Notes: a model not told the origin generated them from the sequence alone. 64,000 nt of DNA from Magallana gigas (GCF_963853765.1 NC_088855.1:7316001-7380000); one strand, 5' to 3'; counted from the first letter of the stretch, positions 7,314 through 56,474 are shown. Translations and numbers: made by a program.

Positions 7314-10300
7314 TTACCATGGTCGCCACACGTCCTGGTCAGACTGGGGCGACGAAAGCGACATCTGGAAGTTGGGCATACACAGGAAGTTGCCCTGGAT
7401 GTTTTGGACCGAATTGGCGGGGATAAGATTTGACTGTCCACCCACAGAAGATGCCATGAAATTTGGTACAGTTGAAATCTGTCCTTGCGGTATCATAACG
7501 AATTGGTTTCCATTGACAACAGAACCAAGCTGCATTGTTGAAGTCTGAGCGGTGCTGCTGGAGACCATTTCACTTCCGGTTCTAGAAGTCTTCACCAAGT
7601 TCAAAGGTGAATCGCTGGTCCTTGTCATCTGAGAGTTTATTGGTACGGGTTGACATAATGTAGCTGTTGGGACTAACACGTACGTTGGAGCGCTCGGATT
7701 GCAGATGTAAACATTTCTATTTCCAGGAAGTTGGGTTGTCGTCTGGCAGGAAGGCGATGACGCGACACTGACAATCGAAGCACTTGACACACGCGGAAGA
7801 ATATTGGCGTAAGACACAGAAGCGACACTTTTAGGATTCTGGTCCACTGCAGGCGACTTGTCTTCGGCGGGTTCGGACGATTTGTTAGAAGGGTTGACTT
7901 GAAGATGTCTTATCAACGCTGATCGGACCTCATCGGGCACGTTTTCCGAAGATTGCAGAAAGTTTTGGATCTCGTTACGGCATTTGTCATACCCGGCTTT
8001 ATACTGCACGCTATCCACTACGCCTTCACGATTTTCACCTTCTGAAATGAAATGAAAATTATATTTGCATTATGAGCTGTTGTCAAAGAATTAAAAGAAT
8101 TCTCTCAGAGATAGGAGGACTTCTTGTCTGTACCTTCTTTTGATGTAGTGGGATGAGATCGCTTGACAAAGTCAACAGTCATTTCCAAAATGTCGGCTTT
8201 TTCCAACTTGTTTGACTTTCCAATCTGAAATTTAAAATAAAGTTGAGCATTACAGATGTTATATTTCACTTCAGTTTTTAGATATATTTTTCATAATTTC
8301 ACCTCATGCAAATATCAACAACTTTTCCCTAAAGTTTTTCCGTCATTTAGGAATACTCAGGTATTAATTAAGTCTCTGGTATGCCGAATTTTAAGTAGAA
8401 AAACCACCCGGAAAAAAAATATTTTATTGATTTTAATTTAACAAACACATGTTCAAAGATTAAATCTTTTCAACATTATGGAGTTTTGTGCTCCGATTCC
8501 GATCCAGTAGCTTTCCTTCTGCATGGTTTTAGCACATCAAAACAATTTAATTCCAACATTGTACGTATAAGGCCGATTTCGGTGCACGATTATGTGTGTG
8601 AATGTAATTCATTATCAGGAATTTCTCAGGAAAATGAATTTCATCAAATCCCATAGATTTCTCTTGTACAGGTGAAATTTGAAAAATCTTCGCTTTCCTC
8701 ACTTCGGTAAGTTTTTAATTTGAAGAATTAAATGTCAATAAAGCTTGGACGCTGGGGTAAAATAGGGGCAAAGCTACCATAACGCTTGAAATTTGCATAA
8801 AATGAAAGCTTAATTTCCAACAAATCCAATTATTAAGACTCATTGCACGCGATTAAAGTTATTAATCGAACTTTTTAAACGGAACGGGGGGGGGGGGGGG
8901 GGGGGGGTATTGGTATTTTTCTCTGAGATAAAATGATTTCTTCCTCTAGGAAAATTTCCTTTATGTAATTCGAAAGCGCTTTTTTCTTAAAAGCAATGTT
9001 TTACAAAAAGTTATATTTTTATCTCAACTTCAAGAATAGCATTTCTTTGATTTAAAAGAATTCGTCACACCTTAAAAAAGTACTGAGATGGCATCGACAG
9101 CACGATGATATGATCGCGTTTTTATGGACTCAAGTTTTCAAAGAAAGGACAAAGTCAATTGAAAAAAAAAAATCAAACTCGAACTGATTTATTCCGGAGT
9201 TAAATAAACAGATATTCCAGTAGTTTACAGTTCTGCGTGTTAAAGTGCGTTACTTTGAGATTCGTCTGCATCGAATCAAAGAAACCAGAGAGGTTTTCAA
9301 TTTTCTGCGTTTAACATTTTTTACTGCATTTTAATTAAGATCAAAAATTGATTTTTTTTTCTGCTTCAATGGACTACCACTTTAAAACGGCGTAGCTAGA
9401 GCTTAAGACTTTTAACCATAGAAACAAATAGATTTCTCAATGGTTCTGCAGTTCGCCGTGTTTATAGAAGAGACATGATAATACATCTGATTGTGGACGA
9501 CAGTTTTGTCACATGCCTCGTCTCGCTCGCTTCTCTTTGACGAGACCACGAAAAGATGTTTACTTTTATCAAGTTGAATTTAAATAGCCAAATATATCTT
9601 TCTTACTTAGCTTAAATGAAATCTGTTTCGTGCTCTGACAAGTCTTATTGCAGATGTGCGACCCGCAATCAGGGCTTGTGTAAACCCCGCGGAACAGAGC
9701 TATAGATAATTTATCGGGTACAAGCCACTTAGTTTCGTTTTTTTTCTTTTTTCCCCGGTGAGGCCTGTGGAAACAAGCCAAGACATATCGACATATCTGA
9801 AAGCAGTTTTGTGACACGAAAACACAATTTACACCATTCCTTAAAAAATAAATCGCCCATTTTTGATAGAAAATTACTATTTTGTTCACAGTAACATGCA
9901 ATTATACCCCTCTACACGTACATAAATGTGCATTATATTCTTTTCTTCTCTGACGGCCATGAACGTTTTCTCTTCAGAATGAGTTTTTTTACGGATCAGT
10001 AAAATGCACGTGCAACAATGGACATTAATAGAACCATGTACAGAGATTTATGTCCGTTTATGCATGATTTATGCGGGCAAAAAGGTGTTATAAAAAACAA
10101 AGCTATTTTATAGCAAATACCTGCATGAAGAGAAATTCATATATACCTAAAGAGAAATTCATATCTTTGTAGTTATGGGCCCGTTACCTTTGGTGTGGGA
10201 AGAAAATAGATAAAGAATGAACAATTTATCGCCCGGAGTAGCTAGTCCGCTAGCATCATCAATTAGCAAGCATTCACGTCATTATCCGTATCACCCCGCC

Positions 10301-11407
10301 ATCTCATATCAACAGGTAAGAGGCCGTTAGAGGGGGGTCCGTATCTACCTTAGGTTTATCCTTGTCCAACTGGGATATCAGAGTCTGGAGCTGGTTCAAG
10401 CATTCGTTTATTCTTTCTCTCCGTCTTCTCTCTATCATTGGTTTGTTTACCTGAAAGAATAAGTAATTTTAACATGTACTTAGAAAACCTTGGAAATATC
10501 TTAATCACCAGGCACTAGCATATCATTGATATGGAGGATACTGTCAAATAAGACCATCATTTAGGGGGATTCTGTCATTTTGAGGATTAGATGTAATTTT
10601 TAACGGTGGCTCCGCAGGCAACGAGAATTGATTAACGTCAAATTACGTTTACTCTCCATGTCACGAATCTCCAGTCGTAATCCTAATCTGTAATATTATC
10701 CATTGATCTTAACCCGAGGATTAGAGGACGATCGCCCCGGATTAGAAACGCCATGCCAAACTTATATGGCGACTAATACTCAGGAATGTTATTGTTTCCG
10801 CCTCAAATAAGTTTCATGAAAAGGTTTTGGGTGCTCACGCCGGTCTCGTGCTATGACGTCATCACATTTTGGGGTACCCGCGCCGCGCTGACCACTGTTA
10901 TTACAGTAAATCACAGAAAGCGAATGAATCAAATGAACCGAGCAAGGCAGATGAATGTTACGACACAGAGAGATTAGTATCAGTAATGGATGTTCCGATC
11001 GTTTATCTTTTAATTTGAATTAGTTTCTTCTAAGATGTATATTTAGAAGCAAAAAAAAAAAAAAAAAAGAATTAAAAAAAACAAAAATGAAAGAGAAAAA
11101 GAAATTTTAAGAGGAGGGGCGGGTGATTACTAAGGATTTGACCACTCTTAGACTAATTTAATTTTCATTAATACAACGCTGTTGACATAATACGGTAAAT
11201 TTATAGATGTAAACAAAACAGTAATTTAGCCTGTCAAATGAAATGAACGTAACACAGGTGAAAACAGCGCAGTAAATAAGCAGACGAGTTAACGTATGAC
11301 TCCCCATACATATAAATATCAAAATCACTTACCCTTCTCTTCGGTGACCCCGTCGAACTGTGGACGGCTTCTTTTTTCACTTCATCTTTGGACTCTGTGG
11401 GTGCCAT
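7314..11407 (-). CDS. HES: HES-A: divergent Hairy/E(spl)-family bHLH-Orange-WRPW repressor, about 331 aa, 4 coding exons
   Basis: Exons 11333-11407 (MAPTESK...SPKRR), 10349-10450 (VNKPMIERRRRERINECLNQLQTLISQLDKDKPK), 8134-8224 ([21 protein letters not shown]...), 7314-8041 (Orange YKAGYDKCRNEIQNFL...; C-terminus SPQSDQDVWRPW*). Introns are GT-AG, phases 0, 0, 1. The basic-region Pro and WRPW are diagnostic. Confidence 0.94.
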
Positions 11408-11503
11408 GATCAGGTGATCAGTTTATAATTAAGAATTAATCGTTAATTGCTAATACTCCTATACATCCATGTCTGTTCGGTGTGATATGTTTCCTAGCAC
11501 TGA

Positions 11504-11572
11504 CACGAGTTGGTCCCACCGACAACTAAGCTCGTCACGCGAAGGCCTCTCTGATTAGCTGTCTGGCACGCG
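11504..11572. promoter_or_regulatory. N-box / class C sites upstream of HES-A (candidate autorepression)
   Basis: CACGAG at 11504-11509, CACGCG at 11536-11541 and GGCACGCG at 11565-11572, 100-165 bp upstream of the ATG. Confidence 0.5.
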
Positions 11573-55248: not shown

Positions 55249-55255
55249 CTTTGGT
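55249..55255 (-). promoter_or_regulatory. miR-9 seed match (ACCAAAG) in the HES-C 3' UTR
   Basis: Plus-strand CTTTGGT about 115 nt after the stop, upstream of the candidate polyA signals (ATTAAA 55187-55192, AATAAA 54797-54802). Confidence 0.45.
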
Positions 55256-55369
55256 GTCAGTGTAAAAATATCTAAATCAGTACAGTAAAACTGTCAAGCA
55301 CTCCAAACATTCTAACAAAAGCACGCGTTTCCTGAGATTCATTGTCCTCTAGAATTTCATGTAAAAAAA

Positions 55370-56474
55370 TCACCAAGGTCGCCACAAGCGCTCTTCTTTC
55401 AAGGTCATGGCTGCGGAAGCCACGGGCGGGCTGGGAACCAGTCCCTTCCTGGTGGACTGGAAAATGTCACGTGACATATCACAGGTGGGTGGGGAGTAAG
55501 GCGAGGGTTTGGGGAGGGACGAGTTCCTGTTAGAGACAGAGTCCAGCATGGCCTGTGATTGTCGGAAAAACACCGGTAAATGTTCACTGTAGAGGTTGTC
55601 GGGAACTATCTGGAAGGACCCGGTCACCTGTAACCCGGATGAAGATGTAGAGTTTGATAAGAACCCCGCCGGTGGCTGGGACAGGAGTCCTTCTGAGTGA
55701 ACACGTGACAGGTCGCTCTGGACTCGTGGAATCTGTACGTGCAATGGTTGTCCGTAGGTCTGCCCGCCTCCCACTTGCGGTGAAGAATTCCCTGTCTGGA
55801 CACAGTTGGACAGATGACCTAAGAGTCGCCCACGAACTTCGTCGTTTATTCCCTGAGAATTTCCAAGATATCTGGCCACTTCGGAGGCACATTCAGTGAA
55901 GCCCATGGAGTATTTGGCGGCGACCGTGGGGTCAGCGGCGACGGCTGACGTCATCTGTCGTCTCTGTAGACTGCGCAGATATTTGACAGTCATCTCTAGA
56001 ATGTCTGCCTTCTCCAGCTTGGAATAATGTGTCGTCTAAAATAAAAGAAAGGATATAGTAACTAAAATATCCTTAATTCCTCTTAAATATGGACCTGAAT
56101 GTGTAATGTTGATTATAAAGATATAAGAATATAAAGAGTTTTAAAGTATTTTAACATTACTGTTCTTAATTACAGTATAAATATAGGTACTTACATCTTT
56201 TTTCATGGCTTGTAGAACAAGGCTTTTCAGTTGAACAAGACAATTATTAATTCGGGCTCTTCTTCTCTTCTCCATCAATGGCTTTTTACTCTGTGAAAAT
56301 AAAAAAATATTAATAGGGATATAGGTTTGATTATTATAGCATACAATTTCAAGTCCGTAATTATAAACGATGGTATATTAAAAAACATATACTTTATAAT
56401 ATCAAATACACTACCTTTCTGGAAAGGATTTTATCCTCTGGAAAGTTTCGATTTTCTTGTTCGTAATCCTCCAT
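55370..56474 (-). CDS. HES: HES-C: hairy/HES1-like bHLH-Orange-WRPW repressor, about 273 aa, 3 coding exons
   Basis: Exons 56415-56474 ([20 protein letters not shown]), 56195-56290 ([32 protein letters not shown]), 55370-56035 ([25 protein letters not shown]...[16 protein letters not shown]...EERLWRPW*). Introns are GT-AG, phase 0. Confidence 0.96.

What the first reader, a model, noticed from the sequence alone, without database searches (positions are those of the whole stretch)
7314..56474. Three co-oriented HES genes forming a Notch-target cluster (E(spl)-complex-like) in a non-arthropod genome
Seen: three intact bHLH-Orange-WRPW genes on the same strand across about 49 kb, with no other recognisable protein gene between them and many GC/CpG-rich non-coding patches. 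Known: tandem HES arrays exist in the Drosophila E(spl) complex, among zebrafish her genes and in amphioxus, and HES expansions are reported in lophotrochozoans, so clustering alone is not unprecedented. Inference: this is a regulatory block in which the paralogs have divided up Notch input, autorepression and miRNA control (see separate findings). CSL sites at 61.9 and 63.0 kb hint that the complex may extend past the right edge.
Basis: partly seen in the sequence, partly recalled or inferred. Interest (0 to 1): 0.8.

Follow-up and report, generated by a model that had tools for sequence, protein, structure and literature searches.

The report
Conserved three-gene HES array in oyster
Three intact, expressed HES repressor genes sit head-to-tail in 49 kb of the Pacific oyster genome. 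The array is real and conserved across bivalves, and two of the genes carry conserved Notch-type promoter sites, but HES clustering in this species is already published and the array is not a counterpart of the fly E(spl) complex.

Summary
The window is Magallana (Crassostrea) gigas chromosome contig C3, 7.316-7.380 Mb. It holds three intact minus-strand bHLH-Orange-WRPW genes: HES_A (4 exons, 331 aa), HES_B (3 exons, 321 aa) and HES_C (3 exons, 273 aa). All have GT-AG introns and spliced transcripts in public RNA runs.

Between them lie only a tRNA-Cys gene and conserved non-coding DNA. No third-codon-position signature appears outside the known exons.

The order CAD, A, B, C on one strand is the same in Crassostrea virginica. 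A and B are linked in Ostrea edulis. C followed by B, co-oriented, recurs in a pearl oyster and a scallop.

Trees give three old paralogy groups. C and B are at least pteriomorph-wide. A belongs to a fast-evolving group that includes a heterodont clam and an abalone.

B and C orthologs in five species share three CSL sites at matching promoter positions. A orthologs have none. Of 16 alignable CSL motifs, 13 are base-perfect in C. virginica, against a 23% background.

The proposed extension past the right edge fails. The 61.9 and 63.0 kb sites are not conserved, and the next sequences are a LINE fragment and glycosidase-like genes.

HES clusters in C. gigas and other lophotrochozoans are already published (PMC5381572, PMC4172395), and no Bearded-class gene is present. 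Sibling notes on this same window cover the promoter details.

The parts
7314..11407 (-). HES_A coding region. Four exons: 11333-11407, 10349-10450, 8134-8224, 7314-8041. 331 aa, bHLH-Orange-WRPW. The mRNA runs from about 11900 to 6947.
   Evidence: Gene model with GT-AG introns. Pfam HLH and Hairy_orange. Four Logan cDNA contigs, L026-L029, match the exon junctions exactly. 327 of 331 residues are identical to the M. gigas protein P0121.
39339..40874 (-). HES_B coding region. Three exons: 40812-40874, 40606-40701, 39339-40145. 321 aa. The mRNA runs from about 41062 to 39162.
   Evidence: Identical to NCBI 'transcription factor HES-4-A [Magallana gigas]' P0004. Spliced cDNA contigs L015-L017. 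The protein is indexed in 335 blocks of the collection.
55370..56474 (-). HES_C coding region. Three exons: 56415-56474, 56195-56290, 55370-56035. 273 aa. The mRNA runs from about 56526 to 54983. An in-frame upstream ATG at 56513 is used by the NCBI model and adds 13 aa.
   Evidence: Logan protein P0239 (38 contigs) is identical to the model. Both junctions are seen in two RNA contig runs and in raw polyA reads of two runs: 8 and 7 reads in one, 26 and 36 in the other, strand-consistent.
40960..41460 (-). HES_B proximal promoter module. TATA 40964-40970. CSL sites 41019-41026, 41222-41229, 41394-41401. GCACGTGG E-box 41184-41191. Also a TGATTGACA motif and CCAAT/GATTGG boxes.
   Evidence: Motif positions. 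All three CSL sites are base-identical in C. virginica, O. edulis and Mizuhopecten; 41019 and 41394 are also identical in Pinctada. Alignment A1.
42366..42434 (-). Distal pair of CGTGAGAA CSL motifs (42366-42373, 42427-42434), about 1.5 kb upstream of HES_B.
   Evidence: Conserved at aligned positions in C. virginica and Pinctada. In O. edulis, 42427 is exact and 42366 sits next to a 1-base insertion.
56560..57413 (-). HES_C promoter module. TATA 56570-56576. CSL sites 56625-56632 (with a TTCACAC partner half-site downstream, a paired-site layout), 56834-56841 and 57406-57413. Palindromic GCACGTGC 56796-56803.
   Evidence: Conserved in C. virginica, Mizuhopecten and Pinctada.
48736..48809 (+). 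tRNA-Cys(GCA) gene in the B-C intergenic region.
   Evidence: Rfam tRNA, 70.2 bits. ARAGORN. 96% identical to two places in the C. virginica interval.
33635..34332 (.). Strongest conserved non-coding element. 88% identical to C. virginica over 700 bp and single-copy in the genome. It lies between HES_B and HES_A.
   Evidence: Mismatches are even across codon positions (26/24/28) and none of its indels is a multiple of three.
15842..16494 (.). Conserved non-coding element, 84% identical to C. virginica, about 4.4 kb upstream of the HES_A ATG at 11407.
52764..53250 (.). Conserved non-coding element, 81% identical to C. virginica, about 2 kb downstream of HES_C.
19091..19098 (+). Distal CGTGGGAA CSL motif, exactly conserved in C. 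virginica. Other conserved distal motifs start at 45084, 47232, 50685 and 59490.
240..2425 (-). Exons of the CAD gene (the glutamine amidotransferase part of carbamoyl-phosphate synthase). CAD is the neighbour downstream of HES_A.
   Evidence: ORFs. In C. virginica the same CAD gene follows the HES_A ortholog on the same strand.

Best explanation
This is an old, conserved tandem array of three HES-family repressor genes in the Pacific oyster. Read in the direction of transcription the order is HES_C, HES_B, HES_A, followed by CAD.

The three are not recent copies.
- C and B are paralogs that already existed, linked and co-oriented in that order, in the common ancestor of oysters, pearl oysters and scallops.
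- A belongs to a separate, fast-evolving HES subfamily that is also found in mussels, a heterodont clam and an abalone.
- A keeps the ancestral third intron, which B and C have lost.

B and C share a promoter that is homologous between them and conserved across these bivalves. Its parts, in order, are a reverse CSL site, a CACGTG-type box, TGATTGACA, CCAAT boxes, a forward CGTGGGAA site and TATA. They are therefore most likely direct CSL/Notch-intracellular-domain targets that repress through Groucho via WRPW, as Hes1/HES4 do in vertebrates. A has no canonical CSL site near its start and probably takes other inputs.

About 36-45% of the intergenic DNA aligns with C. virginica and is non-coding. 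This fits a shared regulatory landscape that holds the genes together.

Shown: gene structures, expression, synteny, phylogeny, motif conservation. Inferred: Notch responsiveness, enhancer sharing and division of labour.
For: - Structures and domains.
- Expression and splicing.
- Synteny in C. virginica (CM130316.1): CAD below 50.343 Mb, A at 50.3487-50.3531, B at 50.3769-50.3785, C at 50.3956-50.3968 Mb. All are on one strand with no other called gene.
- Synteny in O. edulis: A and B are 48 kb apart on the same strand.
- Synteny in Mizuhopecten: C-like at 318 kb and B-like at 389 kb, both plus strand.
- Synteny in Pinctada: C-like at 12.102 Mb and B-like at 12.133 Mb, both plus strand.
- Trees on 117 bHLH-Orange columns: C clade 100/97*, B clade 92/90, A clade with A-like genes of Pinctada, Mizuhopecten, Mytilus, Mactra and Haliotis 99/98*.
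- Introns: A has the phase-1 intron between the bHLH and Orange regions, as do the paralogs at 6.81, 6.84 and 43.68 Mb. B, C and their scallop and pearl-oyster orthologs lack it. This three-intron pattern is described as conserved in Platynereis Hes1-10 (PMC4172395).
- Promoters: CSL sites at about -150, -360 and -530 in all B orthologs. The first two positions are shared by all C orthologs, whose third site lies between -553 and -1396. There are none in A orthologs. Alignment A1.
- Conservation test: 13 of 16 alignable CSL motifs are exact in C. virginica against 22.8% of non-coding 8-mers, binomial p = 1.2e-6.
- The locus is collinear with C. virginica, and only blocks holding known exons show codon periodicity.
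Against: - No experiment ties these genes to Notch in oysters. CSL motifs are short, and conservation shows constraint, not who binds them.
- HES genes in other animals are often regulated independently of Notch.
- The only internal control for 'unusually conserved' intergenic DNA is the CAD part of the window, where only exons align. No genome-wide baseline was run.
- Adjacency of the A-like gene to B and C outside oysters is not shown. Sharing a chromosome-scale contig is inferred from equal contig lengths only.
- No HES_C ortholog was recovered for O. edulis.
- The A family sits on long branches, so long-branch attraction cannot be fully excluded. Shared sequence signatures (N-terminal MAPT, RVNKP-IE-RRRERIN, the loop and the FVK motif) argue against it.
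Confidence: 0.75

Rival explanations
1. The array is a passive relic of tandem duplication. The three genes remain neighbours only because bivalve genomes rearrange slowly, each gene has its own compact promoter, and nothing regulatory holds them together.
For: Spacing is not kept: B-C is 14.5 kb in M. gigas, 17 kb in C. virginica, 30 kb in Pinctada and 69 kb in Mizuhopecten, and A-B is 28, 24 and 48 kb in the three oysters. The most deeply conserved non-coding DNA (to scallop and pearl oyster) lies in the proximal promoters, plus one block about 1.5 kb upstream of HES_B. All seven WRPW HES genes sit on one chromosome in three separate groups, which suggests slow dispersal.
Against: Order and orientation are kept across oysters, pearl oysters and scallops. 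Within oysters, 36-45% of intergenic DNA aligns, while CAD introns in the same window do not. Distal CSL motifs up to 6 kb from the starts are exactly conserved. No unrelated protein gene has been inserted in any species examined.
Confidence: 0.2
2. The conserved GTGGGAA-type motifs are not Notch response elements here. B and C would be driven by other factors, for example those binding the CACGTG box or the TGATTGACA motif, and they work independently of Notch, as many hairy/Hes genes do.
For: The invariant promoter columns include several non-CSL motifs: GGCACGTG, TGATTGACA, CCAAT and GATTGG. No oyster experiment links these genes to Notch; a literature search for DAPT in oysters found none. 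From my own knowledge, unchecked here: several annelid Hes genes are reported to be insensitive to Notch inhibition.
Against: The motif is the high-affinity CSL consensus. It is enriched about three-fold in the window. It is far better conserved than background 8-mers. In HES_C it is laid out as a head-to-head pair upstream of TATA, as in vertebrate Hes1 (sibling note s1-392520).
Confidence: 0.15
3. The array is a true homolog of the arthropod Enhancer of split complex, inherited from a protostome ancestor.
For: Both are tandem, co-oriented bHLH-Orange-WRPW genes with Su(H)-type sites.
Against: The E(spl) complex is defined by bHLH genes together with Bearded-class genes, and its three bHLH classes are reported only from crustaceans and insects (PMC4575448). 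No ESM4/Bearded match exists in this genome and no coding signature appears between the HES genes. Groucho is on contig C6. In the tree, the two crustacean HES sequences available do not join A, B or C.
Confidence: 0.03

Closest known systems
Lophotrochozoan Hes paralog clusters (Bao, Xu & Shimeld 2017, PMC5381572; Gazave et al. 2014, PMC4172395)
   Same: It is the same phenomenon, and in Bao et al. the same species. Seven C. gigas HES genes (CgHES1-7) were reported, many on shared scaffolds. [quoted passage not shown]
   Different: Those papers could not decide whether the clusters are ancestral or arose in parallel. Here the members are resolved into three paralogy groups, with conserved order and orientation across pteriomorph bivalves, homologous B and C promoters, and an intron difference that separates A from B and C. 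I could not map A, B and C onto the CgHES1-7 names because the supplement is not held.
Vertebrate Hes1/HES4 (her6/her9) genes and their Notch-responsive promoter
   Same: B and C are 65-71% identical to HES4/HES1 over the bHLH-Orange part. They have the basic-region proline and WRPW. Their TATA-proximal CGTGGGAA site sits at a similar distance, and in HES_C it has a reverse half-site partner.
   Different: Vertebrate Hes1 and Hes4 are dispersed single genes with four exons. The oyster B and C are tandem neighbours with three exons. The oyster paralogs nearest to vertebrate Hes1/4 in the tree are actually the pair at 6.81 and 6.84 Mb (89/92 support).
Drosophila / pancrustacean Enhancer of split complex
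   Same: Both are tandem arrays of co-oriented bHLH-Orange-WRPW repressor genes with Su(H)-type sites and a gene-poor, regulatory-looking interval.
   Different: The oyster array has no Bearded-class genes. Its members are ancient paralogs rather than lineage-specific bHLH1, bHLH2 and her classes. One member lacks CSL sites. There are three genes rather than the seven bHLH genes of Drosophila. The resemblance is an analogy, not membership.
Amphioxus Hairy A-D cluster and zebrafish her clusters
   Same: These are independent examples of tandem HES arrays with divided expression domains.
   Different: Those arrays are lineage-specific duplications. The oyster B/C split predates the radiation of pteriomorph bivalves, and A is older still.

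Membership tests
HES family (bHLH-Orange-WRPW repressors) | bHLH domain with a proline in the basic region | tested here: met
   Pfam HLH hits on exon 2 of all three genes, E = 3e-8 to 2e-7. The NKP/KKP motif precedes the EKRRR/ERRRR basic run in A, B and C.
HES family (bHLH-Orange-WRPW repressors) | Orange domain C-terminal to the bHLH | tested here: met
   Pfam Hairy_orange scores of 59.6 (B), 54.1 (C) and 30.8 bits (A). All exceed the 25.3-bit cut-off.
HES family (bHLH-Orange-WRPW repressors) | C-terminal WRPW Groucho-binding tetrapeptide | tested here: met
   All three proteins end in WRPW directly before the stop codon.
HES family (bHLH-Orange-WRPW repressors) | Transcriptional repression through Groucho/TLE | not testable with these tools
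   A single Groucho/TLE gene is present on contig C6. Binding and repression were not assayed.
Direct Notch/CSL target genes | High-affinity CSL sites (YGTGRGAA) in the promoter, conserved among species | tested here: met
   Met for HES_B and HES_C: three sites each at matching positions in 4-5 species, and 13 of 16 alignable motifs are exact in C. virginica, p = 1.2e-6. Not met for HES_A: no site within 1.5 kb upstream in three oysters.
Direct Notch/CSL target genes | Expression depends on Notch signalling | not testable with these tools
   No oyster data set with Notch inhibition was found.
Arthropod Enhancer of split complex | Bearded-class gene(s) embedded among the bHLH genes (PMC4575448) | tested here: not met
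   There is no ESM4 (PF15952) match in the genome. The search had no positive control. No intergenic conserved block has a coding signature, and the longest intergenic ORFs have no Pfam hit.
Arthropod Enhancer of split complex | Members orthologous to the her, bHLH1 and bHLH2 classes | not tested
   No E(spl) protein sequence was available from the tools. The two crustacean HES representatives did not group with A, B or C.
Lophotrochozoan tandem Hes clusters | Two or more Hes paralogs adjacent on one scaffold with no unrelated gene between them | tested here: met
   in M. gigas. The same arrangement is seen in C. virginica.

The most novel reading that the evidence does not exclude
HES_C, HES_B and HES_A form an ancestral molluscan 'HES complex': three paralogy groups kept adjacent, in the same order and orientation, since before bivalves and gastropods split. 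Shared long-range enhancers would hold them together, with two Notch-wired members and one Notch-independent member. This would be a lophotrochozoan counterpart of the E(spl) complex that arose independently, and a tractable case of how a signalling pathway's output genes are kept as a block.
Probability: 0.3. Interest if true: 0.55.

Novelty: already known. Interest (0 to 1): 0.33.

Why it matters
HES genes are the main nuclear output of Notch signalling, and why they so often stay in tandem arrays is unresolved. Earlier work on lophotrochozoans could not tell inherited clusters from parallel duplications (PMC5381572).

This locus gives a clean answer for bivalves. The C-B pair, its order, its orientation and its CSL-bearing promoter predate the split of oysters, pearl oysters and scallops. 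The third member belongs to a still older, divergent subfamily without CSL sites.

The result is a short list of conserved, testable elements for the first functional study of Notch targets in a mollusc. It does not reveal a new kind of system.

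Tried and rejected
- Extension to the right: rejected.
- Hidden protein genes between the HES genes: none found. Ten intergenic ORFs had no Pfam hit, and no conserved block shows codon periodicity.
- Structured RNAs: Rfam at gathering thresholds gives only the tRNA.
- HES_A as an oyster-only novelty: this was my first reading, from the word-based search that found only eight oyster hits. 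The exhaustive HMMER search and a second tree overturned it.
- Upstream exons of HES_B: contig L014 joins 46752-46227, 45226-45006 and 41304 onward. The joints have no GT-AG and share 5-10 bases of microhomology. I therefore do not count them as introns or as a distal promoter.
- Groucho linkage: absent, and per PMC4575448 it is not a general E(spl) feature anyway.
- Bearded/ESM4 search: blank, without a positive control.
- O. edulis: isoform X2 of HES_A was not on record. No HES_C ortholog was retrieved. CAD is not within 10 kb of the O. edulis HES_A.
- CAD exons were not seen within 10 kb of the scallop or pearl-oyster B-like genes. CAD + HES microsynteny is therefore shown only for M. gigas and C. 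virginica.
- The supplement of PMC5381572, which maps CgHES1-7 to scaffolds, is not held.

Full report
**Identity of the window.** The window is G000:C3:7316001-7380000 of a 564-Mb, 29-contig assembly. HES_B is 100% identical to NCBI 'transcription factor HES-4-A [Magallana gigas]'. The contig length of 61,039,741 equals that of the M. gigas chromosome record carrying that protein. The organism is therefore the Pacific oyster. The left end of the window holds exons of CAD.

**The observation.** Three minus-strand ORFs end in WRPW. Reading upstream on the minus strand and joining exons at GT-AG sites gives three open reading frames:
- HES_A: 331 aa, exons 11333-11407, 10349-10450, 8134-8224, 7314-8041.
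- HES_B: 321 aa, exons 40812-40874, 40606-40701, 39339-40145.
- HES_C: 273 aa, exons 56415-56474, 56195-56290, 55370-56035.

Pfam finds HLH in exon 2 and Hairy_orange in the last exon of each gene. A scores weakest, at 30.8 bits, which is still above the cut-off. The finding's coordinates are exactly the stop codon of A and an ATG of C.

**Expression.** All three genes are transcribed and spliced as modelled.
- Logan cDNA contigs from four runs each cover HES_A (about 11900 to 6947) and HES_B (about 41062 to 39162) with the introns removed.
- A Logan protein seen on 38 contigs is identical to my HES_C model.
- Reads laid on 54500-58500 show both HES_C junctions (56035|56195 and 56290|56415) in two RNA contig sets. 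They also appear in raw polyA reads of two further runs, with 8 and 7 reads in one and 26 and 36 in the other. Strand bias fits a minus-strand mRNA spanning about 54983-56526.
- The NCBI model starts at an upstream in-frame ATG at 56513. That ATG lies inside the observed transcript, so the true start codon of HES_C is open.
- Published transcriptome work reports most C. gigas HES genes as embryonic (PMC5381572, PMC8166818).

**What lies between the genes.**
- tblastn with the three proteins finds no further HES exon in the window, in 30 kb to the right or in 20 kb to the left.
- The ten longest intergenic ORFs have no Pfam match.
- Rfam and ARAGORN find one gene, tRNA-Cys(GCA), at 48736-48809 on the plus strand.
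- Against the collinear C. virginica interval the window gives 47 ordered matches.
- Only the four blocks holding CAD, HES_A, HES_B or HES_C exons show mismatches concentrated at one codon position. The other 27 blocks of 250 bp or more have even mismatches, and few of their indels are a multiple of three.
- The alignable fraction is 0.36 between A and B, 0.45 between B and C, and 0.38 upstream of C. In the CAD part it is 0.19, where only exons align.
- The best element, 33635-34332, is 88% identical over 700 bp and single-copy in the genome.
- CpG o/e is 0.97 over the whole window.

**Does the array extend to the right?** No.
- Genome-wide Orange and HLH scans place HES-type hits on C3 only at 6.81 and 6.84 Mb, at the three genes here, and at 43.685 and 43.693 Mb.
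- The right flank holds a LINE reverse-transcriptase fragment and then ORFs resembling GH9 glycosidases and a carbohydrate-binding module.

**The rest of the family.** Reading the other loci shows four more WRPW HES genes. One pair sits at 6.81 Mb (plus strand) and 6.84 Mb (minus strand). A near-identical tandem pair sits at 43.685 and 43.693 Mb. Hey is on C5 and a HELT-like gene is on C7. All seven WRPW HES genes are therefore on one chromosome, five of them within 560 kb. The count matches the published CgHES1-7 (PMC5381572).

**Synteny.**
- C. virginica (CM130316.1): CAD, A (50.3487-50.3531 Mb), B (50.3769-50.3785) and C (50.3956-50.3968) lie on one strand in the same order. No other gene is called in 50.3387-50.4068 Mb.
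- O. edulis: A and B are 48 kb apart on the same strand.
- Saccostrea cucullata: the A and C orthologs share a 180-kb contig, judged from equal contig lengths.
- Mizuhopecten: a C-like gene (318 kb) precedes a B-like gene (389 kb), both on the plus strand.
- Pinctada imbricata: the C-like gene (12.102 Mb) precedes the B-like gene (12.133 Mb), both on the plus strand.
- In every case C lies upstream of B in the direction of transcription, as in the window.

**Phylogeny.** I used 117 bHLH-Orange columns with LG+C20, rooted on Hey and HELT.
- The C clade (oysters, Pinctada, two scallops) has 100/97* support.
- The B clade (the same taxa plus Mytilus) has 92/90.
- Reciprocal tblastn scores agree with these assignments.
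- So does non-coding evidence: the B promoter aligns only with B-like promoters and the C promoter only with C-like promoters in scallop and pearl oyster.

HES_A first looked oyster-restricted, with only eight hits in the word-based search. An exhaustive HMMER search found full-length relatives in Pinctada, Mizuhopecten, Mytilus, Mactra and Haliotis. These share its N-terminus and distinctive bHLH signatures, and they join it in a 99/98* clade. The Pinctada, Mactra and Haliotis rufescens A-like genes sit on chromosome-scale contigs of the same length as those carrying B/C-type genes. That suggests linkage but not adjacency.

**Introns.** All three genes share the first two phase-0 introns. A also has a phase-1 intron between the bHLH and Orange regions, at the same place as in the 6.81, 6.84 and 43.68 Mb paralogs. 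B, C and their scallop and pearl-oyster orthologs lack it. This three-intron layout is the conserved pattern in Platynereis Hes1-10 (PMC4172395). A is therefore not a late copy of B or C. The B/C ancestor most likely lost the intron before it duplicated.

**Promoters and CSL sites.**
- YGTGRGAA occurs 22 times against 7.75 expected.
- Within 1.5 kb upstream of the ATG, every B ortholog (M. gigas, C. virginica, O. edulis, Mizuhopecten, Pinctada) has a forward CGTGGGAA at about -150.
- Every C ortholog (M. gigas, C. virginica, Mizuhopecten, Pinctada) has it there too.
- All of them also have a reverse site at about -360 (TGTGGGAA, or CGTGGGAA in the Pinctada C ortholog), plus a third reverse site further up.
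- The three A orthologs have none.
- A nine-sequence alignment shows an invariant series: TTTTCCCAC, GGC-CGTG, TGATTGACA, CCAAT, GATTGG, CGTGGGAA, then TATA. The reverse half-site TTCACAC follows the proximal site only in C orthologs. This agrees with sibling notes s1-392483 and s1-392520.
- Of the 16 motifs that fall in blocks alignable to C. virginica, 13 are base-perfect. Only 22.8% of all non-coding aligned 8-mers are (binomial p = 1.2e-6).
- The conserved distal motifs lie at 19091, 42366, 42427, 45084, 47232, 50685 and 59490.
- The single motif inside HES_A (10194, in intron 2) is not conserved.

**Interpretation.** The anatomy fits two Notch-wired HES genes, B and C, whose promoter has been kept since before the pteriomorph radiation. 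Next to them is an older, faster-evolving HES gene, A, that is expressed and under purifying selection (mismatches 119/29/56 by codon position) but lacks CSL input. All three are embedded in conserved non-coding DNA. Notch dependence, autorepression through the CACGTG box and enhancer sharing are inferences.

**Comparison with what is known.** Tandem Hes clusters in C. gigas, Lottia, Lingula and annelids are published, with the caveat that ancestry versus parallel origin was unresolved (PMC5381572, PMC4172395). The arthropod E(spl) complex is defined by bHLH plus Bearded-class genes and arose within arthropods (PMC4575448). Here no Bearded/ESM4 match exists (no positive control), nothing coding lies between the genes, and groucho is unlinked. 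The E(spl) comparison is therefore an analogy. No oyster experiment with Notch inhibition was found.

**Verdict.** The array is a real, intact, expressed and deeply conserved HES array. The cluster itself is already known. The increment is a resolved history (three old paralogy groups with fixed order), a CSL-less member, and a set of conserved candidate Notch elements. Interest is moderate to low.

Noticed in passing
window 48736-48809 (+): A tRNA-Cys(GCA) gene lies between HES_B and HES_C. It is 96% identical to two places in the matching C. virginica interval.
   Followed up: partly
window 33635-34332: A single-copy non-coding element is 88% identical to C. virginica over 700 bp, better conserved than the HES coding exons. 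It has no Rfam hit and no coding signature. Its function is unknown.
   Followed up: partly
window 57450-57990: A roughly 0.5-kb stretch has very high depth on both strands in RNA runs, with many reads running off into unrelated sequence at 57504 and 57990. It looks like a dispersed repeat, perhaps a MITE or SINE, just upstream of the conserved CSL site at 57406.
   Followed up: no
L014 (Logan SRR21843886 contig) against window 46752-46227, 45226-45006, 41304-40812: One RNA contig joins two upstream stretches to the HES_B transcript. The joints have no GT-AG and share 5-10 bases of microhomology. It could be a template-switch or assembly artefact, a deletion haplotype, or unusual upstream transcription.
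   Followed up: partly
G000:C3:6813502-6814542 (+), 6844150-6844802 (-), 43685393-43693030 (-): The other four WRPW HES genes of the genome are on the same chromosome. A divergent pair 470-500 kb to the left groups with nemertean and vertebrate Hes1/4 in the tree. A near-identical tandem pair sits at 43.69 Mb.
   Followed up: partly
The NCBI model uses it, and it lies inside the observed mRNA. Its sequence context is weaker than that of the second ATG.
   Followed up: no
window 41184-41191, 56796-56803, and TGATTGACA in alignment A1: Between the two proximal CSL sites, all B and C orthologs keep a GGC-CGTG E-box (palindromic GGCACGTGCC in C) and an invariant TGATTGACA. From my own knowledge, the latter resembles a Pbx/Meis composite site.
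   Followed up: no
L003 170-1183 and L004 2733-3946 (G000:C3:7390001-7410000): ORFs resembling a carbohydrate-binding module and GH9 endoglucanase fragments, next to a long tandem Cys/Tyr/Val-rich repeat, are the next coding sequences to the right of the HES array.
   Followed up: no
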